DNA of 64,000 nucleotides. It comes from Iphione sp. A-MEVVRFRX5. Lineage: Eukaryota. How positions within the stretch are numbered: position 1 is the stretch's first letter; each line of letters begins with the position of its first letter. Under the pieces are notes generated by a model that was not told the origin of the DNA, did not search any database, and was given only the letters and a program-made list of their open reading frames with translations. The stretch is from NCBI GenBank assembly GCA_976226885.1, contig OZ320322.1:41044001-41108000 (forward strand). Direction: 5' to 3'. Positions 52,990 through 64,000 of the stretch are shown piece after piece. A program made the translations under genes and the position numbers.

Positions 52990-53027
52990 TTTTTTTTTTT
53001 TTTTTTTTTCAATTCAATATGTTTATT
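52990..53027 (-). terminator. Poly(A) signal AATAAA (53022-53027) and 20-nt genomic poly(A) tail (52990-53009)
   Basis: Read directly, about 240 nt downstream of the ORF2 stop. Confidence 0.9.
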
Positions 53028-53261
53028 GAGCAACACTGTCACCTAAATCTAAGTGTTTCCCAACATGTGCTCAGAAAGGAAAGATTGTTTTCCTATCCGA
53101 TAACAAGCCGTTCATCAATCATCTGAGACGACATCCGGAGCCGCGTGCGTTCCTATAGGGCCTTGAGGTTTCTAATGCTCTTCTCACGGATGCTGTCACC
53201 GACGACACTATGTACAGATATACTCTACAACCTAATTCTCAATTGCTATTTCTGCGGTAAA

Positions 53262-56036
53262 TTACTTCTTCAGCACCCTCTTTAATTGGCCTTTATTCAA
53301 TTTCCTTTGGGCCTGAGGCAGTTTGTTCCAGCTAGTTAACCCTAAGTATAGAAAACTACCGCGATATGACTCTCTTGCCGGCCTGCACACTTCCCAGTCT
53401 CCTTGTTGTCCTGCACGAGTTCCATGTACTGGGATTGGTCTGAAAAATTTGAGTTGAGACATGTCATATATCAACAGGAGCAGAAAATACTCTATGCGAT
53501 CCTCCAACTTAGTCATACCATTTTCTTCCCTCCAGTTCCCCACCCTTCTCTGCGATGTAAACCTATTCATGAAGCACTGCTTAATTGTATCTAGAAATGC
53601 TCTCTGTAACTTGATCAACATACTCCCCTTTATCCCAGGTAGGAATTCTAGTCCATGATTTAGAATAGGTAACACGAACCCGTTGTAGGCCATTCTCATG
53701 GTCTTTTCGTCAAGAAGGCCCTTGGCCCTACCAAGGATATATCCCCGCGTTCGTAATTTTTTGACTTTGTCCTTGATTAGCTGGTCAAATTGCAGATTTT
53801 CATCTATCAAGTACCCCAAGTAGTTAAATGTCCTAACCCTGCCCAACTTCGATCCCTCCAGATACAGGTCAAGATCCATTGTACTTGTTTTCCCGAAACA
53901 CATATATTTTGACTTCGATTGATTTAGTTTCATCCCATTCTGTCTACACCAGGCAGATATTTGCCTTAGTGTATGTTGCAACTTAAGATTCAATGCCCAT
54001 GCACTCACTCCCCATGAGTATATCGTTATATCGTCCGCATATACAACTAATCGCGACGGGAATGACACTTTATTCAGGTCGTTCATTAGGACTGTGAACA
54101 ACCAGGGCCCCAATATGGAGCCCTGAGGGACGCCACGATGTACTGCCCTTACTGATGACAATGTCCCATTACAGGAAACCATCTGTTCTCTCCCATCCAA
54201 ATAGTCTTTGAACCAATCCTTCACTTTCCCAGTGTAGCCATAGTTACCCAGTTTGAGCAATAGAAGTTCGTGAGAGACCAGATCGAAAGCCTTGCTCAAG
54301 TCTAGGTAAATGGCTCCAGGATATCTAGACTTGTTACAGTCATTATAAACATGTGTTAACAGATCAGCACAGGCTAAGCTGCATCCCCTGCCAGAGCGGA
54401 ATCCATACTGGCATTCCATCATCAGCCCGCTAGCCTCGGCGTATGCACTGACCTGGTCAAACACGATCCTCTCGAGGACCTTTCCAGGTACTGGCAACAG
54501 AGAGACAGGACGATAGTTCTTGCAATCAGAACGTGTGTTCCTCTTGTAGACTGGTACCACTTTTGCTTGCTTCCAACTATCAATAAAATGTCCTGATGCT
54601 AAACAATCATTCATAATCCATGTAAACATGTCTAACTTTATTTGGAGCAGGTCCCGCAGTGTACTCATGTTCATGCCCTCAATGCCTGATGGTTTTGACA
54701 ACTTCAGTCCTTTGATATGCTTAAGTACCTTACTATTACTGACTTCCTGGAACGTCCCCATTCCCGCCATGTCACGTGTCAGGGGGGGTAGGAATACGTT
54801 ATCCATTTCCATTGCAGTCTCCTCAACTGAGTCAATGAAAAAGTTGTTAAATATCTCTGCGGACTCCCCTTTATCTCTTGTTATGCCATCCTGTCTTAGT
54901 ATTATGTCTCCTCTATTACTCACATTACCAAATACCTGATGTGTTATTGTTTGCCATAACCTTCTCGGGTCACTGATTGATTTGGCTATATCCTCCGCCA
55001 CCCTTTGTTTTTTGTTGCGTTGTATCTCCCTATTTACTTCCGATCGATAGTACCTATATATCCTGAGACTATCTTCCTCATGGTCCCGCTTATGCTTCCT
55101 AAAGAAATAATCCCGTTCCCTTTTCAGTTCTAGCACTCTCCCGGTCAACCAGAATGGTCTTCCTTCAAGTATTCTCTTCTCCCTAAAGGGTGCTAATTGG
55201 TCAAGGGCTGCTAAGCCATTACTCTGTAGTTTGTCCCAGGCTGCTTTCCCGTCGACTTCACCAGTAAGAGTCCAGTCCAAACTAGTAAGCGTTTCCTTAT
55301 AGTTTACGTAACTATATCCCCTATAGTCCCTTACTCTCATAATGGTTGATGGTGCTTTCCTATTGAACCTCTTTATCTTAATGTAGACTGGACTGTGATC
55401 ACTCGCTGCATCTCCCCATGTGCCGCCCTCAAACACATATCTGTGGTTCGTGTAGATATGGTCGAGGCATGAGCCACTACGAAAAGTTGGAACTGTTATT
55501 AACTGGGGTAGTTTGAAGCTTTTTGATAAGTCCAAGCACTTATTTCTGTCATTGGATGGTTTCATCCAATTTACGTTCATGTCACCTAGTACGGTTACTG
55601 TCCTATCCTCATACTTGCAGAGGTGAGTCAGTGTCATTCTCAGTCTTTCCAGATAGGCCCCTAAGTTGCCGTTAGGCCTTCGGTAAATGATGGCAAAGTA
55701 TTGTTTTTTCCTGTTACCTGGCTTTACCCTTAGTGCTAGGATGTGACCGTCTTCATCCACGGATGAGCACCCTTCCAGAATTTCATAGTCAAAATCCTGT
55801 CTTACATACACCAACACGCCACCACCCACCCGTAAGCCCGTCGCGGCTGGGCAGCGGTCCTGTTTGATCGATTTATATCCATCTATCTCAACAATAGAGC
55901 TTGGTATCCCTCCACTTAGCCAGGTCTCGACTATAGCCAGTATGTCTATCTGGTGTTCATATAACATACTATGCACCTCACTCAGCTTGCCCAGAATGCT
56001 GTGTACATTCCAAGCTGATATTGTTAGTATCGTCAT
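53262..56036 (-). CDS. LINE ORF2: AP-like endonuclease + reverse transcriptase, 924 aa, intact
   Basis: APE motifs WNVHS, VETWL, YRRP, GDMNVNW, LDHIY, SDH. RT motifs NYRPVSLL, QYGFR, LDLSKAFD, GVPQGSILGP, YADD. No C-terminal CCHC, which fits the CR1/L2 group rather than L1. Confidence 0.97.
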   Translation of the reverse strand: MTILTISAWNVHSILGKLSEVHSMLYEHQIDILAIVETWLSGGIPSSIVEIDGYKSIKQDRCPAATGLRVGGGVLVYVRQDFDYEILEGCSSVDEDGHILALRVKPGNRKKQYFAIIYRRPNGNLGAYLERLRMTLTHLCKYEDRTVTVLGDMNVNWMKPSNDRNKCLDLSKSFKLPQLITVPTFRSGSCLDHIYTNHRYVFEGGTWGDAASDHSPVYIKIKRFNRKAPSTIMRVRDYRGYSYVNYKETLTSLDWTLTGEVDGKAAWDKLQSNGLAALDQLAPFREKRILEGRPFWLTGRVLELKRERDYFFRKHKRDHEEDSLRIYRYYRSEVNREIQRNKKQRVAEDIAKSISDPRRLWQTITHQVFGNVSNRGDIILRQDGITRDKGESAEIFNNFFIDSVEETAMEMDNVFLPPLTRDMAGMGTFQEVSNSKVLKHIKGLKLSKPSGIEGMNMSTLRDLLQIKLDMFTWIMNDCLASGHFIDSWKQAKVVPVYKRNTRSDCKNYRPVSLLPVPGKVLERIVFDQVSAYAEASGLMMECQYGFRSGRGCSLACADLLTHVYNDCNKSRYPGAIYLDLSKAFDLVSHELLLLKLGNYGYTGKVKDWFKDYLDGREQMVSCNGTLSSVRAVHRGVPQGSILGPWLFTVLMNDLNKVSFPSRLVVYADDITIYSWGVSAWALNLKLQHTLRQISAWCRQNGMKLNQSKSKYMCFGKTSTMDLDLYLEGSKLGRVRTFNYLGYLIDENLQFDQLIKDKVKKLRTRGYILGRAKGLLDEKTMRMAYNGFVLPILNHGLEFLPGIKGSMLIKLQRAFLDTIKQCFMNRFTSQRRVGNWREENGMTKLEDRIEYFLLLLIYDMSQLKFFRPIPVHGTRAGQQGDWEVCRPARESYRGSFLYLGLTSWNKLPQAQRKLNKGQLKRVLKK

Positions 56037-56185
56037 ATTTACGCCTATCTACAAGGAGAAAAACTACCCCCAAGAACACGTATAGTAGATGCGTCTAAAG
56101 AGGTAATGTGATGTTTTCCAATGTTTTGACGGCCTGCCGACTTGACCAGCCCAGAAATAGTGATTTATCAAACCATACCTTACAC

Positions 56186-56815
56186 TCATCGCAGAATGAC
56201 TAGGACAGCGGACTTGATGTTTCTCACCCAGCTTGCCGTAGCCTTATTACCTGAATGGCAGCCATCATACAAGTACGTGTAGCGCATTCTGTATTTCCCT
56301 CTCGTCCTCCGATGCACAGGGAACTCTGTTGCAGGTGTATAAATACTGTAGAGTGAGTTGAATTTCCTATAAAAAACATTCATCTCCTTCACCATGTTAT
56401 TCAGTGATGACTGAAACTCATTAGTATATGTGGATGGGCTGTATTGTGCTAGGTTTATGCCGCATATTGGAACAAGCCCTATCGGTACATATGGGTGATA
56501 TTCATTTACCCTTGATTTGAGCAAGGATGCCAAGGCATCCATCCAAAGCCTAAATTCAAGCATATTGTCATGTCTAGGGCGCAAGATATTTGCTCCCTTA
56601 ACTTTTTTTGTTAGGTCACATATGCCTGCAAATATATACACTAAACTGTAGTCACTCAGATCTGTTTCTCGTAACTTATCTAGCAGAAAACCTAGTCGAG
56701 CACCGGGGAATGACCACACAGTCAGCTGCACTTCGTTTTCAGTGCCCCATTCCTCGTCCAGCATAGATGATATAGCCCGGCCTCTGGAATCGCTCAAAAG
56801 TAGTACTTGACGCAC
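56186..56815 (-). CDS. Stand-alone SGNH/GDSL-type esterase, 209 aa, GTG start or small 5' frameshift
   Basis: Block I LLLSDSRG, block II FPGAR, block III FAGICD, block V YDGCH, with typical spacing. Confidence 0.8.
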   Translation of the reverse strand: MRQVLLLSDSRGRAISSMLDEEWGTENEVQLTVWSFPGARLGFLLDKLRETDLSDYSLVYIFAGICDLTKKVKGANILRPRHDNMLEFRLWMDALASLLKSRVNEYHPYVPIGLVPICGINLAQYSPSTYTNEFQSSLNNMVKEMNVFYRKFNSLYSIYTPATEFPVHRRTRGKYRMRYTYLYDGCHSGNKATASWVRNIKSAVLVILR

Positions 56816-57285
56816 CAGTCAATATCATACGATGAGTAGAAGTATTATTCAAGTATTAATGGTAGAGTCCTGTAGGATCATTGTGCTGACCGGATTCTCT
56901 GCTATCATGACGTATATTAGTGAGCCTATTAGTAAATTAAATAGGCTCTCACGCTTGAAAATAGGTACTAATATTTCAACATTTTGTATCTATTGTAAAT
57001 TTGTGAACCCCGGCAGATTGTTGCAACAGGGTCGATCACTTGCCTAGACAGATTATGTACAGATTCTTTCCTTAGGACTGTGTAAAAAAAGTCGACTTTT
57101 TTTCTTGCTATTTTCTACCAACAAGGGTTACAGTGCAATAGTGGAGTTACTTTCCGCCTAGTCCCCATACCTCAGCCAGTATAGACACCATACCTCAATC
57201 CCAAGTGCAATGTGGCGATCGATGAGTCAATCACACGCTACCGTCTTGTTGTATGTGGCTGTCAGGATACTGAAAGACCATATGG

Positions 57286-59058
57286 TTACACATTATCATC
57301 TGACAGAGTGTCCCGTAATTTTTGCAACACGATACCTGTCAAATTTCTTCCAGTCCACCCACCGTTTTTGATTCTCGGGTCCCACAAGTGACAACCAGAT
57401 CCATAGATGTAATCACGATTTGCATCTATTTATGTTTTTTTACCACTGCCCAGTAATTCTCGAACAAATTTGTCACTTACGTTGAGCTTCGCATTGAGGC
57501 CTTCTTTCAGTATTTCTTCCTGCATGTGTACCCAATCTCTCGATTTCCGTATTTGGTATGTGAGAGACAACACCCTACTACCATCCGGCTCTGACAGGAC
57601 TTGCTGGCGAATGTCGTCACGATCATGTAGCCGCGCGCATTCTGCCGCTAGCCAATGATTGACACTTTTGTATGTCCCCCCGCCCAGTTCTAGAGATACT
57701 GGCGCCTCATTGGACAGGACACTATGTGGGCCGCTAAAAATAATTGAATTCCCGACCTGCCTTTTGGCCGTTTCCTCAAGAGAAAGCCCGTTGGGCAGCT
57801 TATGTAACTCATGGAATTTGTACTCTGTGCCCTCGACCCGAATAGTGGTGCCATTTACCGTCGATTTCATTCCCTTACTGTTTGCCAAGTTGCTAATCAA
57901 TTTTAGTGCTTTGTTCGTTTTCCTAGCTTCCTCAGGCAGATCCTCCCTAAAGAATATGTGACCTCCCCCCTGAAGATAATTCAGGTTTGATTTTTTCGAG
58001 AAGACACCATCCCTTATTTCTTCACACAGCATTTTTACTATTATTGGCCTGGGTCTGTTTCTCGTGTTACCTACCCTGACGGCTGATAGTAGCGCATCAG
58101 AGTAGTAGTAATCACGATCAATTGTGGATAGTAAGTTGTCTACTGCGCACCAAGTGTCCTCATTGTATCCCTCAGGTAGACCCTCAATTATAAAATTCGA
58201 TCTCCTGATGTCTACCTCAAGTTGTATAATCTGATCTCTCAACTTGGTGTTCTCCGCCTCTAAGATACCCAACCGTAGGTCTTGCTGGCGAACAGAGTTA
58301 TCAATCAGCTGGGTCATACTGTCGCTAATTGTACTACCTGCATTCTTTACACTTGCTTCGGCCTGCTCTAATTTGTCAGAGAGTTTATTGATTGTTTCCC
58401 TTTGTTTCGCAACCTTATTCTCAAGCCCTGCTACCGTTGTTTCTAGAGCACTTATTTTAGACAGCGTTGGACGAATTTCACTTAGCTCCTGCCTAATTTC
58501 ATTTAGTAGTAACATCATAATCGCATTGTTGGACGGGCTACCCCCACCGCCCATCGGGGTGAGTGAAACGGGGTTGTTGCCCGCAGAACACAAGTCAATA
58601 AGAGTGTATCCATCACTTTCATCGTTGAGTTTCAGTGGAAACTCTCCAATGGCATCAGGATCGTTCACAGGTACAGCGGAGGGGGGTAACGGATACACAC
58701 CTCCCTCCCCTTCATTGTTCTTCGCATGGTAATCAGACTCATGATCATCAACCGGTTTTTTCAGTAGCGTCCCGTCTGCTTCTGGAATGTTTATCGGTGC
58801 AGCTGGGGGTGATAACGGGTAAGAGTTGGTATCCCCCTCATTATCTTCCACATTGTGAACAGGTGGAGTGGGCTCGCTGGCACAGTCACCTGAGACCCCA
58901 ACAACAGAGGCACCCACCTGTTCACCGCTGTGCCCACCGATTCCTCCATTGTCGCTCAGAGGTTCCATTCCTGGCTTTCTATTCTTCTTTCCTTTCTTAT
59001 TTGTTGACGGTAGAGTGTTCTCCTTCGTCTCGACGGTACCCTGAGATCTTGTTAACAT
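57286..59058 (-). CDS. LINE ORF1: Pro/acidic N-terminus, coiled coil, L1-type RRM, C-terminal NADAR (YbiA-like) domain; one in-frame TAA at 57430-57432
   Basis: Likely ATG at 59058. Heptad region LETTVAGLENKV..., RRM start IRRSNFIIEGLPE...RPRPIIVK. NADAR-like FSGPHSVLSN...YKSVNH...W...EEILKEGLNAK...LLGSGKKT*IDANRDYIYGSG...WTGRNLTGIVLQKLRDTL; final stop at 57286-57288. Confidence 0.85.
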
Positions 59059-59699
59059 TATTCTCAACCAAAAATCTTTTCTAGGCTCAATTATCAATCG
59101 ATTTCTGGATGATCAAGTCGGAGTCGCGCCAGCACACGTCTTCACCCCGCCATGCTCTCTTTCGTCCACAAGTGCCCGGATTCCCCACTCCAAGAATAAA
59201 TATTAAGTAGTAACACTGGCGTAGCCCACCAGGGGGTGCTACCATGAATGCTTGTACACACGATGGAGTTTGTAACGTGGTTCTTCCTGTTAAGGATAGA
59301 TGGCAGTATCGTACACAAGCATTGAGTGAAAGAGGGTGGAAGTGATCTTCGTGGTTTCAGTTACTTACACTAAAATTGATCAGAGGCTGAGCCACGTACT
59401 CCTTTTCAAACGGTTTTACACGTAGCTTAGCAATCTAGATACAACGGATAAATTTCGCACGCTTTTTGTTTTTGTTGTAGGAAATTAATATTTTTACCGA
59501 CTAGGATCCGTTTAAAATACATGCAGTTTATCAGGTATCCACAGCAAATTGATATCCTGTGACCTGTAATAATGTTATCACCTGATTTTTTTTATTCCAT
59601 TCATGCATAGATGTTAGCTAATAGTGATTCGTTAAAAGACGTACCAGCACTCTTCATCTAGATTTACACCTGACTTTGTCATCTCTGGTTAATAGCCTG

Positions 59700-60900: not shown

Positions 60901-61299
60901 CCTTCACTCAGCCTTTATTGTAGTTTGCGTGTTTAATCCTCCACTTGGGTATATCCAACTATTGTTACTACAGTCCAGGCTTAGTATGATCCACTGAAGT
61001 TAGCCCATGTATCCTCCCAAGAGGTAGTCCCAAGTGGTTATGTGCTGCTAAGGTTCCCCTGAAGAACAAGTGCCACAAAGGTAATCCAAGTGCAAACTGG
61101 TTTATTGGCCACACAGGACCCATATTTATACCTCTCAAACAAGTCATGTGATCACAGAAAATAGCAACCATGTATTCTTCTTTGGAATAAAATGTATACA
61201 ATGTCTCTTGTGTTGTCATTCTACACCAATCAGCTGTTGGCACCCTGGCTGGTATCTGGAGATCCAGGGGCTAAGGTCACCTCTAATCTTAACTGGTTC

Positions 61300-61517
61300 G
61301 GGGTACCCCAACGATCCGTATATCTGGGGGTCATTCGGTGCATCTAATTTTCCCTACTGTCTGGGGTACCCCAGCCCAAACCTTCCTAGGGGTGAACAAG
61401 TACATTCAGGCAAGTAGCTCAACCCTAGCTGACTCGGGGTACCCCGTACGTAAATGTTTCCCCTCCCTACAGTATCCTAGGTCGAGTAGCTGCGTCCTAA
61501 CTAACTCGGGGTACCCC
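61300..61517. repeat. Four GGGGTACCCC palindromes at 63-73 bp spacing
   Basis: At 61300, 61363, 61436 and 61508; the last two share the flank CT(G/A)ACTC. Confidence 0.9.
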
Positions 61518-61888
61518 ACACATGAAAGTGCTCCCTCTCTACACTCTCCCCTCGTTAAATCCAGCCCATCTCTATAAATAAGACCCTTCCCGAAATACAT
61601 GTCTAACATCATGAAACAACTTCTATGCAGATAATTCTTTTAGCAACCCCCCTGGCACTGGTCATTCCTGAAGCAGTCCGGACTACTGCACCAGGTATCC
61701 CCAGTCACCAGAATAGTAACATCCTATCACAACTTCTCAATTCTAGTTAACTTTTACCCTGAGTACAGAGATATAAACATTCCGTCCTGGGATAACACTG
61801 CAGAATCACCACGTCACGTCAACGTTCATCACAACCTTTACGTCGGTCTGTACAACTCTCTAGACAGCAGTCGATCACCTGTTTCTTA

Positions 61889-62422
61889 ACATCAACAACG
61901 TGTTTTTGTGGGGGCTAGTCCCCCTTTTGCATAAGTTTCTGACTTATCACAATCTTCTGGCTTTGGTCAGCGTATCACCATGAGCTATGACATCTTGTAC
62001 CTTGGATAACATCAACAACTTGTTTTTGTGGGGGCTAGCCTCCCTTTTACGTAAATTTCTGACTTATCACAATCTTCTGGCTTTGGTCAGCGTATCACCA
62101 CGAGCTGCAACAGCTTGTACCTCGGATTATACAGGTAACTTATTTTTGTGGGGGCTAATCCCCCTTTTACATAAACTTCTGACTTATCACAATCCTCTGG
62201 CTTTGGTCAGCATATCACTACAAAATCCCATACTGTAAGTAAGATGGGTAACTTATTTTTATGGGGGCTAATCCCCCTGACACATAAGCTCCTATCACAA
62301 CTCCCTGGCTTTGGTCGGTATATCACTACAAGCTACAAAGTCTTGTACCTGGAATAACATGAATAATATGTTTTTGTGGGGGCTAGTCCTCCTTCTCATG
62401 TCAACTTCTTGTCTTATCACAA
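61889..62422 (+). repeat. ~120-bp tandem repeat, about 4.5 copies
   Basis: Anchor T(G/A)TTTTT(G/A)TGGGGGCTA at 61901, 62021, 62141, 62254 and 62369. Confidence 0.92.
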
Positions 62423-62689
62423 ACAGGAATTACTTTTGTATCCGATCTTCGACCTGCACTTTTCAGTAATAAATCTTTGCATGAACACTAAGAGGCACAA
62501 CAAGTATCAAGGCCACGTCACCGGGTTTCATAATAGCTGATCATCCACAGTTCTCTTAAGCACCATCATACGGGCATCCTCTGGTTCTTCCTCACATCTG
62601 TGAGGTAGAACCCCGAGGGGTTTATAAGTCATCTAACACACCACGGGCCACCTGGCCAACAAGAAATAAAGTCCTATACCCAGTCAGCT

Positions 62690-64000
62690 TTACTTACGGC
62701 AACTCCGGAGCCGCTTATGCTTAGAACGACTCCGGGAGGAACACGTGTCTACCCCAACACGTCGGGGCGGTCCGCCCCACCCACTGTCCCACATGTCCGG
62801 TATCCCCAACCTGAGCTGTCGGGGAGGGGCCAATCGGCATACGTCGCTGACCGTGGGATGACGGGCACGGCGGACATCCCTGGCTGCTTGTGCTGCCTGC
62901 TGCCACTGTTGAGACTGTCGTACAGCACGTTCGGGGCTGTCTTGCAACCGGCGAACAAAGTTCTCAGCTGCCTCAGCGGTGCGGTTGTGCTGGGTGAAGG
63001 CATCTTCTAGGTCGCCCCAGTCCTCCGCCATCGGTAATGCCAGGCCAGGCAGCAGCAGCGCCGGACGTTTCTTGAGCGGGTCTAGTAGGGTTGGCGGCGG
63101 GGCCCCTCCACCATCCTCGACTAGGTAGAGGACCCACGCCAAGGCGAGGCATGACATGAGGCGCTGGGGGGCCGACATCAGCTCCCAATCCTTAGGGGGC
63201 CAAGTGACAGCTTGCGGTAAGCTGACGGGCTCGGGTACAAATCGTCCCCTCATGGCGGGAACATAGGACCCGACCAATCCGTCGAGGAAGCAGCGGGCTT
63301 GCCGCGACGCCAACGCCGCAGGCTCGGGCGGTAGTAGTCGGCCCGTTAGGCGAGACAGGTGCCCGTCGGGAAGCGGGAGGGAGTCGAGCAACTCTGGTGT
63401 GGCATAGTCGTCAGCGGCGCCGCAAGGGGGGGTAGGCCCCACCTCGGCCCCAACCTCTACTGCCGCTTTCAGTTGAGCCACCACCGAGGACACGTCCAGG
63501 GTGGCCCAGTGGGAAGACTGATCTGGGAGGTGCAAGGGCGGCGTCGGGGGCACGTCGCCAAAGAGGGGGTCATTACGGGCTGCACAAGATCCGCCCTCTC
63601 TGGCTGGAGTGGACGCACTGGAAAGGGTAATTGCCTGGCTGAGGAGTACATCTCCTCGTCTGGACGGGCTGCCAGCAGGAAGAGCGGGTCTCCTCCTCTC
63701 AGGTGTGGCGGGCATGGATGACGTCGCCCTCGCAGGGGAGGAGGGTGTGCTGTACCTCGGGCTCTGGTCGCTTCTCAGGATGCTCCTCGGGGACAGTATC
63801 CGGGGGGCTCTTGATCGGTGTTCGCTGGATGCAAGCAACCGCAGGGCCTCCTCCTGGCTCAAGAACCACCCCCTGCTCCTGAGGCGGTACGCCTTCAGGA
63901 GGATCTCTGTCAACTCATCATCAGGCACATGAACCTTGGCCTTGGGGTCAGCAATGACGTAAAATAACTCCCGATACGGGGCCTCAGTCAGGCCTAGTTC
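62690..64000 (-). CDS. Unknown GC-rich protein, at least 436 aa, open to the window edge (5'-partial); probably mobile-element encoded
   Basis: The frame is open from 64000 (ELGLTEAPYRELFYVIADPKAKVHVPDDEL...). Globular-looking blocks (YRELFYVI...RGWFLS and WPPKDWELMSAPQRLMSCLALAWVL...LLLPG) flank a Pro/Ser-rich linker; no introns; family not recognised. Confidence 0.65.
   Translation of the reverse strand, partial: ELGLTEAPYRELFYVIADPKAKVHVPDDELTEILLKAYRLRSRGWFLSQEEALRLLASSEHRSRAPRILSPRSILRSDQSPRYSTPSSPARATSSMPATPERRRPALPAGSPSRRGDVLLSQAITLSSASTPAREGGSCAARNDPLFGDVPPTPPLHLPDQSSHWATLDVSSVVAQLKAAVEVGAEVGPTPPCGAADDYATPELLDSLPLPDGHLSRLTGRLLPPEPAALASRQARCFLDGLVGSYVPAMRGRFVPEPVSLPQAVTWPPKDWELMSAPQRLMSCLALAWVLYLVEDGGGAPPPTLLDPLKKRPALLLPGLALPMAEDWGDLEDAFTQHNRTAEAAENFVRRLQDSPERAVRQSQQWQQAAQAARDVRRARHPTVSDVCRLAPPRQLRLGIPDMWDSGWGGPPRRVGVDTCSSRSRSKHKRLRSCRK

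What the first reader, a model, noticed from the sequence alone, without database searches (positions are those of the whole stretch)
52990..59160. Tricistronic LINE carrying a NADAR (YbiA-like) domain in ORF1 and a free-standing esterase
Seen: three same-strand ORFs between one 5' motif and one poly(A) tail. After its coiled coil and L1-type RRM, ORF1 ends in ~150 aa (57286-57744) matching the NADAR motif series: F...S.LSN, Y.SV.H, W...M...L.AK, LL.SG.K.L.DA..D..YG.G, W.G.N..G..L..LR..L. Established: NADAR proteins include YbiA N-glycosidases and the antitoxin of DarT1-NADAR, which removes ADP-ribose from guanine in DNA. The CR1/L2 ORF1 accessory domains I know of are PHD, esterase, CCHC and RRM; I know of no described NADAR. 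Inference: the element may carry its own counter-defence or repair module that erases or shields ADP-ribose or base lesions on its RNA or on the ssDNA/TPRT intermediate. ORF2 is intact, so the family is probably young. I cannot check whether Repbase or Dfam already list this layout.
Basis: partly seen in the sequence, partly recalled or inferred. Interest (0 to 1): 0.92.

Follow-up and report, generated by a model that had tools for sequence, protein, structure and literature searches.

The report
Three-gene LINE with decayed NADAR domain
This is one full-length copy of a jumping gene (a LINE) from a lineage whose RNA-packaging protein carries an ADP-ribose-removing NADAR enzyme domain, followed by a separate esterase gene; the layout is real, shared by distant relatives and barely described, but in this copy the NADAR domain has lost its key catalytic residues and carries a stop codon.

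Summary
The three-ORF element is real. It lies on the minus strand and ends in AATAAA plus A20 (52990-53009). ORF1 is a disordered N-terminus, a coiled coil, an L1-type RRM-CTD and a YbiA-type NADAR domain. A stand-alone SGNH-like ORF and an intact 924-aa APE-RT ORF2 follow. NADAR is supported by Pfam, a family profile and a predicted fold that matches PDB 8BAU.

The order ORF1-NADAR > esterase > ORF2 recurs in five diverged elements from other assemblies. Their ORF2s form one clade with this one, so it is a single element, not a juxtaposition.

- An in-frame TAA (57430-57432) cuts NADAR.
- The catalytic Glu and Lys equivalents are Asn and Cys. NADAR is the least conserved of 136 relatives, while RRM-CTD is among the best conserved.
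- The esterase has no in-frame ATG.

Of 135 relatives with all three catalytic columns, 122 keep the residues, so catalysis probably matters for the family but not for this copy.

Prior art is one sentence in PMC12477816 (oyster 'Tx1' ORF1s). This scan has already noted the same layout many times elsewhere in this genome. The de-ADP-ribosylation or counter-defence role is inference only.

The parts
52990..53009 (-). poly(A) tail (A20), the 3' end of the element
   Evidence: AATAAA lies 12 nt upstream at 53022-53027
53010..53261 (-). 3' UTR containing the AATAAA signal
53262..56036 (-). ORF2, 924 aa, APE endonuclease plus reverse transcriptase, intact
   Evidence: Pfam RVT_1 2.2e-35 and Exo_endo_phos 1e-7; YADD, ETWL, GDMN and SDH present; groups with ORF2s of other NADAR-bearing elements
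56037..56185 (-). 149-nt spacer between the esterase ORF and ORF2
56186..56815 (-). stand-alone SGNH-like hydrolase ORF (209 codons from GTG); Ser10, Asp184 and His187 kept; no in-frame ATG before Ser10
   Evidence: Homologous middle ORFs in L004 (BLASTP 9e-7), L007, L008, L010 and L011. Low-confidence model (pLDDT 56), but its 45 Foldseek matches at E<=1e-3 are almost all SGNH/GDSL-type hydrolases. Pfam GDSL_2 reaches only E 0.065. Invariant D9, S10, G38, G64, D184 and H187.
56816..57285 (-). 470-nt spacer between ORF1 and the esterase ORF; holds a perfect 20-bp palindrome at 57084-57103 and an out-of-frame ATG at 56826-56828
57286..57429 (-). C-terminal 47 codons of the NADAR domain plus the final stop, in frame with ORF1 but cut off by the internal stop
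   Evidence: Pfam NADAR 22.8 bits, profile 123-162
57430..57432 (-). in-frame TAA stop inside the NADAR domain
57433..57771 (-). N-terminal two thirds of the NADAR domain (ORF1 residues about 430-542); catalytic Glu and Lys equivalents are N467 (57658-57660) and C474 (57637-57639)
   Evidence: Pfam NADAR 28.6 bits; model pLDDT above 90 and match to 8BAU
57784..58206 (-). L1-type RRM plus CTD of ORF1p (residues about 285-425)
   Evidence: family profile vs 2YKP 5.5e-16; fold vs 2YKO 8.6e-8, TM 0.68; 25 of 28 conserved family columns kept
58207..58530 (-). coiled-coil helix of ORF1p (residues 177-284)
   Evidence: weak coiled-coil Pfam hits
58531..59058 (-). predicted disordered N-terminal region of ORF1p with an internal repeat of about 24 aa; the first in-frame ATG is at 59058
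59059..59160 (-). 5' UTR; the true 5' end was not determined
   Evidence: no TSD found; composition changes near 59500

Best explanation
The locus is one full-length, probably recent insertion (about 6.2 kb, minus strand) of a poly(A)-tailed APE-RT LINE. It belongs to a distinct lineage defined by a NADAR domain fused to the C-terminus of an L1-type ORF1p (coiled coil, RRM, CTD).

Shown: the domain anatomy; the same gene order in diverged relatives; one ORF2 clade for the NADAR-bearing elements examined; strong conservation of the NADAR catalytic residues across the family; and conservation of the Ser/Asp/His triad of the middle ORF in this copy and three relatives.

Inferred: ORF1p coats the element's own RNA. 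In most family members NADAR therefore sits on the RNP as a nucleic-acid ADP-ribosyl hydrolase or N-glycosidase. It would remove ADP-ribose from bases of the RNA or of the single-stranded DNA made during target-primed reverse transcription. The esterase would supply the lipid- or membrane-related function proposed for LINE esterases.

In this copy, and probably in its immediate lineage, NADAR is no longer an enzyme. The Glu and Lys equivalents are Asn and Cys, the Trp is Tyr, much of the ADP-ribose pocket is replaced, and a stop removes the last 47 residues. The RRM-CTD is meanwhile very well conserved. The esterase lacks a normal start codon. This copy is therefore a partly decayed example of the architecture, with only ORF2 and the RNA-binding part of ORF1 looking intact.

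Confidence is about 0.9 for the anatomy and lineage, 0.8 for 'NADAR catalytically dead here', and about 0.35 for the de-ADP-ribosylation role in the family.
For: - Anatomy.
- Family size: 1566 50%-identity clusters at E<=1e-3 and 403 at E<=1e-10. The listed hits mostly span coiled coil, RRM and NADAR in one aligned stretch.
- The family profile hits 8BAU at 1.8e-36, YbiA at 6e-29 and L1 ORF1p at 5.5e-16.
- Relatives pass the Pfam NADAR cutoff at 71-108 bits.
- Linkage to APE-RT ORF2: P0001, P0002 (four places shown, on five contigs), P0021 and P0107; L001, L004 and L005.
- Esterase between ORF1-NADAR and ORF2 in L004, L007, L008/L009, L010 and L011.
- ORF2 clade of 13 (support 0.94) holding the window, L005, L008 and L011.
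- Catalytic columns: 122 of 135 relatives keep E / K or R / E or D; the window has N / C / D / D / Y.
- The window keeps 25 of 28 conserved RRM-CTD columns but only 20 of 38 NADAR columns, the lowest of 136; Fisher p = 0.003.
- Roles of E43, K50 and E125 come from mutagenesis and the structure in PMC11543638.
- NADARs, including an animal one, remove ADP-ribose from guanosine and cytidine; the ScARP enzyme that makes these marks modifies both DNA and RNA (PMC12945103).
- Guanine-specific DNA ADP-ribosyltransferases exist in invertebrates (clam CARP-1; PMC11209040).
Against: - No activity, substrate or host ADP-ribosyltransferase was tested.
- Catalytic residues have been lost more than once: in the window, in L011 (Lys to Met) and in P0001 (Lys to Cys). 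Catalysis is therefore dispensable at least for some lineages.
- No second copy of this family could be obtained, so I cannot show that Asn/Cys and the stop are family-wide rather than private to this copy. Insertion age and the 5' end are also unknown.
- The SGNH assignment of the middle ORF rests on a low-confidence model and on motifs. Sequence profiles do not reach significance.
- The RT clade name was not established.
Confidence: 0.62

Rival explanations
1. In this lineage NADAR is kept as a non-catalytic module, for example an ADP-ribose- or nucleotide-binding or structural appendage of the ORF1p trimer. It is neither a dying domain nor an enzyme.
For: The fold-defining motifs and a confident model persist (pLDDT above 90) while active-site residues are replaced. 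Losses of the Lys also occur in P0001 and L011, which otherwise look like intact ORFs. The 47 codons after the stop still match the profile.
Against: This copy has a nonsense codon inside the domain. NADAR conservation is the lowest of 136 relatives, which fits relaxed constraint as well. Model confidence is partly borrowed from the family alignment.
Confidence: 0.2
2. The family's NADAR acts on RNA ends or caps (ADP-ribosylated or NAD-capped 5' ends, or RNA repair intermediates) to mature or protect the LINE transcript. It is not a defence against DNA-base ADP-ribosylation.
For: ORF1p is an RNA-binding protein. NADAR is fused to mRNA capping enzymes in giant viruses (Atlas neighbours). PMC12477816 relays the hypothesis of an RNA-processing role for NADAR in RNA viruses. 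ScARP-type enzymes modify RNA as well as DNA.
Against: No such activity has been shown for any NADAR in the papers read here. The demonstrated activities are on base-linked ADP-ribose and on riboflavin intermediates.
Confidence: 0.15
3. The gene order is a chance juxtaposition: an ORF1-NADAR gene or element happens to lie next to an independent esterase-ORF2 element.
For: Spacers are long (470 and 149 nt) and the esterase has no ATG. No TSD or second copy was found to delimit the unit.
Against: The same order occurs in L004, L007, L008/L009, L010 and L011, from two other data sets, at 22-30% protein identity. The ORF1 and ORF2 trees both group these elements with the window. There is a single poly(A) tail.
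Confidence: 0.02
4. NADAR works as a YbiA-like metabolic N-glycosidase on riboflavin-pathway intermediates and has no nucleic-acid role.
For: The family carries the YbiA-type Glu in the last strand in 132 of the 135 relatives aligned at that column. JGI names two hits 'ribA/ribD-fused uncharacterized protein'.
Against: A small-molecule housekeeping activity gives no evident benefit when fused to an RNA-packaging protein of a retrotransposon. YbiA-type NADARs also hydrolyse ADP-ribosylated guanosine (PMC11125620).
Confidence: 0.03

Closest known systems
Repbase 'Tx1' LINE families of Crassostrea gigas whose ORF1 proteins appear to hold YbiA-family NADAR domains (one sentence in PMC12477816, Genome Biol 2025)
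   Same: A NADAR domain in the ORF1 protein of a non-LTR retrotransposon of a lophotrochozoan.
   Different: Those are labelled Tx1 (L1 group). The ORF2 here is far closer to a bird RT protein (presumably CR1; 1.7e-89) than to human L1 ORF2p (1e-10). No esterase ORF, catalytic-site analysis or distribution was reported there. The Repbase sequences could not be compared here.
L1-type (type II, Transposase_22) ORF1p: coiled coil + RRM + CTD (PDB 2YKO/2YKP)
   Same: Same three-part core by profile (5.5e-16) and fold (TM 0.68). This type is also known in CR1 and L2 clades (PMC4120745).
   Different: It carries an extra C-terminal NADAR domain of about 160 aa and a long disordered N-terminus. Pfam PF02994 itself does not hit this protein at E<=1.
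Esterase-type (type IV) ORF1p of CR1/L2 elements, e.g. zebrafish ZfL2-1 (PMC3905857)
   Same: A transposon-encoded SGNH-like hydrolase with a conserved Ser/Asp/His triad.
   Different: Here it is a separate middle ORF without its own coiled coil, in an element that also has an RNA-binding ORF1p. Type IV ORF1ps were defined as a class lacking RNA-binding domains. The block III Asn is not conserved (GIC-D/N). Sequence similarity to known SGNH profiles is below threshold.
NADAR hydrolases: P. nicotianae NADAR (8BAU), E. coli YbiA (2B3W), the DarT1-associated antitoxin
   Same: YbiA-like fold and motif series. The family keeps the E43, K50 and E125 equivalents.
   Different: It is fused to a retrotransposon RNA-packaging protein with no partner ADP-ribosyltransferase in the element. 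This copy has Asn, Cys and Asp at those sites, plus a stop.
Ectocarpus Gypsy LTR retrotransposons with NADAR at the N-terminus of Pol (PMC12477816)
   Same: A retroelement that acquired a YbiA-family NADAR domain.
   Different: An LTR element with NADAR in Pol rather than in the Gag-like protein, in a brown alga; probably an independent acquisition.
CR1-Zenon elements (PMC13343379)
   Same: CR1-group-like ORF2 with a poly(A) tail. Zenon is reported in molluscs, crustaceans, insects and hydra.
   Different: The Zenon elements in that study lacked any ORF1. Membership was not tested here.

Membership tests
NADAR (PF08719, YbiA-like) | Significant match to the family sequence profile | tested here: met
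   Two in-frame, collinear pieces score 28.6 and 22.8 bits (E 2e-6 and 1.2e-4). Each is below the 35.1-bit cutoff on its own because a stop splits the domain. Read through with X, the copy scores 164 bits against the relatives' HMM. The relatives' profile hits 8BAU at 1.8e-36.
NADAR (PF08719, YbiA-like) | YbiA-like fold | tested here: met
   The AF2 model has pLDDT above 90 over residues 430-542. Foldseek gives 8BAU E 4.9e-5 (rmsd 2.5 A) and 2B3W E 3e-3. The model lacks the last 47 residues.
NADAR (PF08719, YbiA-like) | Catalytic residues equivalent to E43, K50 and E125 of 8BAU (E88, K95 and D171 of E. coli C7 NADAR; PMC11543638) | tested here: not met
   The window has N467, C474 and D545, and also Y552 for W133. 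122 of 135 relatives keep them.
NADAR (PF08719, YbiA-like) | ADP-ribosyl or N-glycoside hydrolase activity | not testable with these tools
   Needs biochemistry.
L1-type (type II) ORF1p | Coiled coil followed by RRM and CTD | tested here: met
   Helix 177-284 and RRM-CTD 288-420; 2YKO E 8.6e-8, TM 0.68; family profile vs 2YKP 5.5e-16. Pfam PF02994 gave no hit for the single sequence.
SGNH/GDSL hydrolase (LINE esterase) | Significant sequence-profile match | tested here: not met
   Pfam Lipase_GDSL_2 E 0.065, 14.2 bits against a cutoff of 32.9. A four-sequence profile against PDB finds nothing. Relatives give no GDSL hit.
SGNH/GDSL hydrolase (LINE esterase) | SGNH flavodoxin-like fold | tested here: inconclusive
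   The model is poor (pLDDT 56, pTM 0.54). Even so, its 45 Foldseek matches at E<=1e-3 are almost all SGNH/GDSL-type hydrolases, TM 0.4-0.54.
SGNH/GDSL hydrolase (LINE esterase) | Ser (block I), Asp and His (block V) triad; Gly and Asn oxyanion hole | tested here: inconclusive
   S10, D184, H187 and G38 are invariant in the window, L004, L007 and L010. The block III Asn position reads GIC-D/N. The L011 relative has Ser to Asp and Asp to Asn.
Type IV esterase ORF1p architecture | Esterase is part of ORF1p, with a coiled coil and no RNA-binding domain | tested here: not met
   It is a stand-alone ORF downstream of an RRM-type ORF1.
CR1-group LINE | RT phylogeny places the element within CR1, L2 or related clades | not tested
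   No reference RT set was available. Indirect evidence: the best named relative is a bird RT protein (1.7e-89), relatives carry PF14529, and some neighbours carry PHD modules, whereas human L1 ORF2p reaches only 1e-10.
CR1-group LINE | 3' end with a short microsatellite rather than poly(A) (poly(A) reported only for Zenon; PMC13343379) | tested here: not met
   A20 tail after AATAAA. Relatives L005 and L011 also end in poly(A).
Tx1 LINE (label of the oyster families with NADAR ORF1) | RT groups with Tx1/L1 | not tested
The weak similarity to L1 ORF2p, and no APE match to any solved structure including L1 EN, argues against it.

The most novel reading that the evidence does not exclude
A whole clade of invertebrate LINEs carries its own enzymatic kit: a NADAR nucleic-acid de-ADP-ribosylase on ORF1p plus a separate SGNH esterase. 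If so, ADP-ribosylation of RNA or single-stranded DNA would be a host defence against retrotransposition in animals, with catalytic-site loss in some lineages (as here) marking escape from, or the end of, that conflict.
Probability: 0.2. Interest if true: 0.85.

Novelty: new variant of a known kind. Interest (0 to 1): 0.6.

Why it matters
ORF1 proteins of LINEs are known to mix RRM, zinc-knuckle, PHD and esterase modules, but an ADP-ribose-processing enzyme is not part of the accepted repertoire. NADARs are the enzymes that undo base ADP-ribosylation of DNA and RNA, in bacterial toxin-antitoxin and phage counter-defence systems and in vitro for animal proteins, while the role of animal NADARs is unknown. 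I found hundreds of diverged ORF1-NADAR proteins with conserved catalytic residues, linked to one ORF2 clade. That gives a concrete system for asking whether nucleic-acid ADP-ribosylation acts on retrotransposon intermediates in animals. This copy adds that the domain can be lost functionally while the RNA-binding core stays under strong constraint.

Tried and rejected
- The search for homologous proteins found nothing with ORF1 or with the esterase. The word index missed relatives that the exhaustive HMMER search then found.
- No sequencing runs were listed for two stretches. Read laying was therefore not used, and copy number, expression and variation at the stop could not be checked.
- There is no other copy in the window and no TSD of 9 nt or more up to 61500, so the 5' end is undefined.
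- DNA for the ERZ26222911 loci was unavailable, so their middle ORFs are known only by size.
- Sequence-profile proof of the SGNH identity failed.
- I first thought the Lys-to-Cys change was shared ancestry with the best hit, P0001. The ORF1 tree instead places the window, weakly (0.53), with the esterase-bearing L004, L007, L008 and L010 proteins, which keep Lys or Arg. I dropped that claim.
- Rfam and Pfam scans of the rest of the window gave nothing.
- The search of earlier findings by sequence and by detailed words was blank.
- A named RT clade could not be assigned because there is no reference set.
Full report
**Anatomy**

The feature lies on the minus strand. ORF listing and three-frame translation give the following parts:
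- ORF1 starts at the first in-frame ATG, 59058. It runs 542 codons to an in-frame TAA at 57430-57432. The same frame then continues for 47 more codons to a second stop at 57286-57288.
- A 470-nt spacer follows.
- Next is an open frame of 209 codons (56815-56186) that has no in-frame ATG ahead of its first conserved motif.
- A 149-nt spacer follows.
- ORF2 is an intact 924-codon frame (56036-53262).
- The element ends in a 252-nt 3' UTR with AATAAA (53022-53027) and an A20 tail at 53009-52990.

ORF2 has Pfam RVT_1 (2.2e-35) and Exo_endo_phos (1e-7), and the usual ETWL, GDMN, SDH and YADD motifs.

The 5' boundary is not defined:
- I found no second copy in the window.
- I found no target-site duplication.
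- No public sequencing runs were listed.
- Composition changes near 59500.

**Is the NADAR match real?**

Yes. Pfam PF08719 matches both pieces on either side of the internal stop. The matches are collinear and in the same frame:
- Piece 1 scores 28.6 bits against profile positions 14-117.
- Piece 2 scores 22.8 bits against profile positions 123-162.

Each piece is below the 35.1-bit cutoff only because the domain is split.

An exhaustive HMMER search of 1.84 billion cluster representatives found 1566 proteins at E<=1e-3 and 403 at E<=1e-10. None exceeds 32% identity. The listed matches mostly cover coiled coil, RRM-CTD and NADAR in one stretch.

A profile of 30 of these proteins plus the window protein hits three solved structures:
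- P. nicotianae NADAR 8BAU at 1.8e-36
- E. coli YbiA 2B3W at 6e-29
- human L1 ORF1p 2YKP at 5.5e-16

Relatives pass the Pfam NADAR cutoff on their own at 71-108 bits. Read through with X at the stop, the window copy scores 164 bits against the relatives' NADAR HMM.

An AlphaFold model of the 542-residue product shows:
- a disordered segment at residues 1-177
- a long helix at 177-284
- an RRM-CTD at 288-420
- a confident NADAR core at 430-542

Foldseek matches the model to 2YKO (8.6e-8, TM 0.68), 8BAU (4.9e-5, rmsd 2.5 A) and 2B3W.

**Is it one element?**

Yes. Relatives of ORF1 sit directly upstream of APE-RT ORFs wherever context could be read.

A homologue of the middle ORF lies between ORF1-NADAR and ORF2 in two data sets:
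- L004, L007, L008/L009 and L010, which are Logan contigs of runs ERR14368245, ERR14368248 and ERR14368249
- L011, from ENA assembly ERZ25767047

Pairwise BLASTP of the window ORF against L004 gives 9e-7.

Other relatives lack a middle ORF: P0002, shown at four places on five contigs, and L005.

In an ORF2 tree of 118 sequences, the four elements with a known ORF1-NADAR (window, L005, L008, L011) fall in one clade of 13 with support 0.94. That clade excludes about 105 other CR1-like hits, including a bird protein and PHD-bearing forms.

In the ORF1 tree the window groups, weakly (0.53), with the esterase-bearing elements.

L005 and L011 also end in AATAAA plus poly(A).

**State of the NADAR domain in this copy**

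PMC11543638 shows which residues matter:
- E43, K50 and E125 of P. nicotianae NADAR correspond to E88, K95 and D171 of E. coli C7 NADAR. They coordinate the distal ribose and the phosphates.
- The E88Q, K95 and D171 mutants lose activity or antitoxin function.
- D130 and W133 also contact the ligand.

Aligning the 150 best relatives to the NADAR HMM gives these counts:
- E43 equivalent: Glu in 145
- K50 equivalent: Lys in 105 and Arg in 30
- E125 equivalent: Glu in 132
- 122 of the 135 relatives with all three columns keep E / K or R / E or D

The window has Asn467, Cys474, Asp545, Asp549 and Tyr552, and the stop is codon 543.

This is not uniform decay of a dead copy. Over family columns conserved at 60% or more, the window compares as follows:
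- It keeps 25 of 28 in the RRM-CTD, rank 129 of 136.
- It keeps 20 of 38 in NADAR, the lowest of all 136.
- Fisher's exact test gives p = 0.003.

I therefore infer that NADAR has been under relaxed or changed constraint in this element's lineage for some time. The nonsense codon is a late event, because the 47 codons after it still match the profile.

Sister elements with an esterase keep Glu, Lys or Arg, and Glu. L011, the closest ORF2 relative, has Lys to Met. P0001 has Lys to Cys. Loss has therefore happened more than once.

**The middle ORF**

Sequence profiles do not establish it as SGNH:
- Pfam GDSL_2 reaches only E 0.065.
- A four-sequence profile finds nothing in PDB.

The two-sequence AlphaFold model is poor (pLDDT 56). 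Even so, its 45 Foldseek matches at E<=1e-3 are almost all SGNH/GDSL-type hydrolases.

An alignment of the window, L004, L007 and L010 shows these residues invariant:
- Asp9-Ser10 (block I)
- Gly38
- Gly64-Ile65-Cys66
- Asp184 and His187 (block V)

I accept 'SGNH-like hydrolase with a conserved triad' as likely. The canonical block III Asn is not conserved.

Relatives start with an ATG three codons before the first strand. The window has TGA at that position, and the nearest ATG (56828-56826) is out of frame. This copy's esterase therefore either uses a non-AUG start or is not translated.

L011's middle ORF has Ser to Asp and Asp to Asn, which makes it a pseudo-esterase.

**Which LINE group?**

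- ORF2's best relatives are 27-30% identical.
- The only informatively named hit is a bird (Mycteria americana) RT protein at 1.7e-89. From general knowledge, bird LINEs are overwhelmingly CR1.
- Several neighbours carry PHD modules typical of CR1-type elements.
- PF14529 is common among the relatives.
- Human L1 ORF2p and R2 reach only about 1e-10, on the RT core alone.

This supports a CR1-group-like element and argues against L1/Tx1, but no reference phylogeny was possible.

The poly(A) tail is unusual for that group. PMC13343379 reports poly(A) only for Zenon, which lacked ORF1 in that study.

**Comparison with the literature**

- PMC4120745 lists Transposase_22-type ORF1 in CR1 and L2 subgroups. 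It found esterase ORF1 only in vertebrates and reports no NADAR.
- PMC3905857 defines esterase ORF1ps as a class without RNA-binding domains. It reports them in CR1, RTEX and Penelope elements of chordates, cnidarians and sponges.
- The only mention of NADAR in LINEs that I found is one sentence in PMC12477816. It says ORF1 proteins of several Repbase Tx1 families of Crassostrea gigas appear to be YbiA-family NADAR domains, and it also reports NADAR in Ectocarpus Gypsy Pol.
- Searches for DUF1768 or YbiA with retrotransposon terms found nothing else.
- The Atlas places the nearest ORF1-NADAR clusters in Eukaryota, with the few recorded members in Annelida.

**Function**

Shown:
- the domain anatomy
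- the linkage of the three ORFs
- conservation of NADAR catalytic residues in the family at large
- loss of those residues in this copy

Inferred: ORF1p packages the element's own RNA, so an active NADAR would act on the RNP. The known activities are removal of base-linked ADP-ribose from guanosine and cytidine, and N-glycoside cleavage. The ScARP enzyme that writes such marks modifies both DNA and RNA. Guanine-specific DNA ADP-ribosyltransferases occur in invertebrates.

A counter-defence or repair role is therefore reasonable for the family. I put it at about 0.35. RNA-end processing and a non-catalytic role are the main rivals.

For this copy the enzyme reading is unlikely. What remains intact is ORF2 and the RNA-binding core of ORF1.

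**Earlier notes of this scan**

Many first-stage notes describe the same ORF1-NADAR / esterase / APE-RT layout elsewhere in this genome. One follow-up (s1-327774) also concluded that the fusion is real, widespread and often lacks a catalytic residue. I did not rely on these notes; my own tests agree with them.

**Verdict**

This is a new variant of a known kind: a LINE with an unusual, barely described accessory-domain set. This copy is a partly decayed example of it.

Noticed in passing
window 57084-57103: A perfect 20-bp palindrome (A7-GTCGAC-T7) sits in the 470-nt spacer between ORF1 and the esterase ORF. Another first-stage note (s1-312060) flagged it too. Its function is unknown.
   Followed up: partly
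window 58531-59058 (-), ORF1 residues about 74-145: The disordered N-terminus of ORF1p holds two copies of a motif of about 24 aa (NEG..YPL.P.A.P.N.P.A.G) roughly 50 residues apart, an internal duplication.
   Followed up: no
L007:3887-6841 and L010:364-3441: In two relatives the esterase reading frame continues in the same frame directly after the single ORF1 stop codon, with no further stop before the esterase. This could allow readthrough fusion, or it could be chance.
   Followed up: no
L011:3591-5793: The closest ORF2 relative (30% identity) has the three-ORF layout with both accessory active sites altered: NADAR Lys to Met, esterase Ser to Asp and Asp to Asn. It still has open frames and a poly(A) tail.
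   Followed up: partly
L001:347-4244: This relative's ORF1 carries a Ser- and acid-rich tail of about 150 aa after NADAR. A 2.1-kb stretch without any ORF of 80 aa or more follows before ORF2, and no esterase was detected.
   Followed up: partly
window 62690-63928 (-): A 412-codon open frame rich in Pro, Ala, Ser and Arg, with no Pfam match, lies in a GC-richer stretch with strong negative GC skew (61000-64000). It is unrelated to the LINE.
   Followed up: partly
Atlas neighbours of ORF1: Structural neighbours include mollusc clusters in which an ORF1-like fold is joined to an Impact_N domain, and arthropod clusters with Baculo_FP domains. These may be other accessory fusions of ORF1-like proteins.
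   Followed up: no
P0090, P0098: Two ORF1-NADAR relatives from JGI metagenome contigs are named 'ribA/ribD-fused uncharacterized protein'. This is an automatic NADAR-family name that hides their retrotransposon origin.
   Followed up: no
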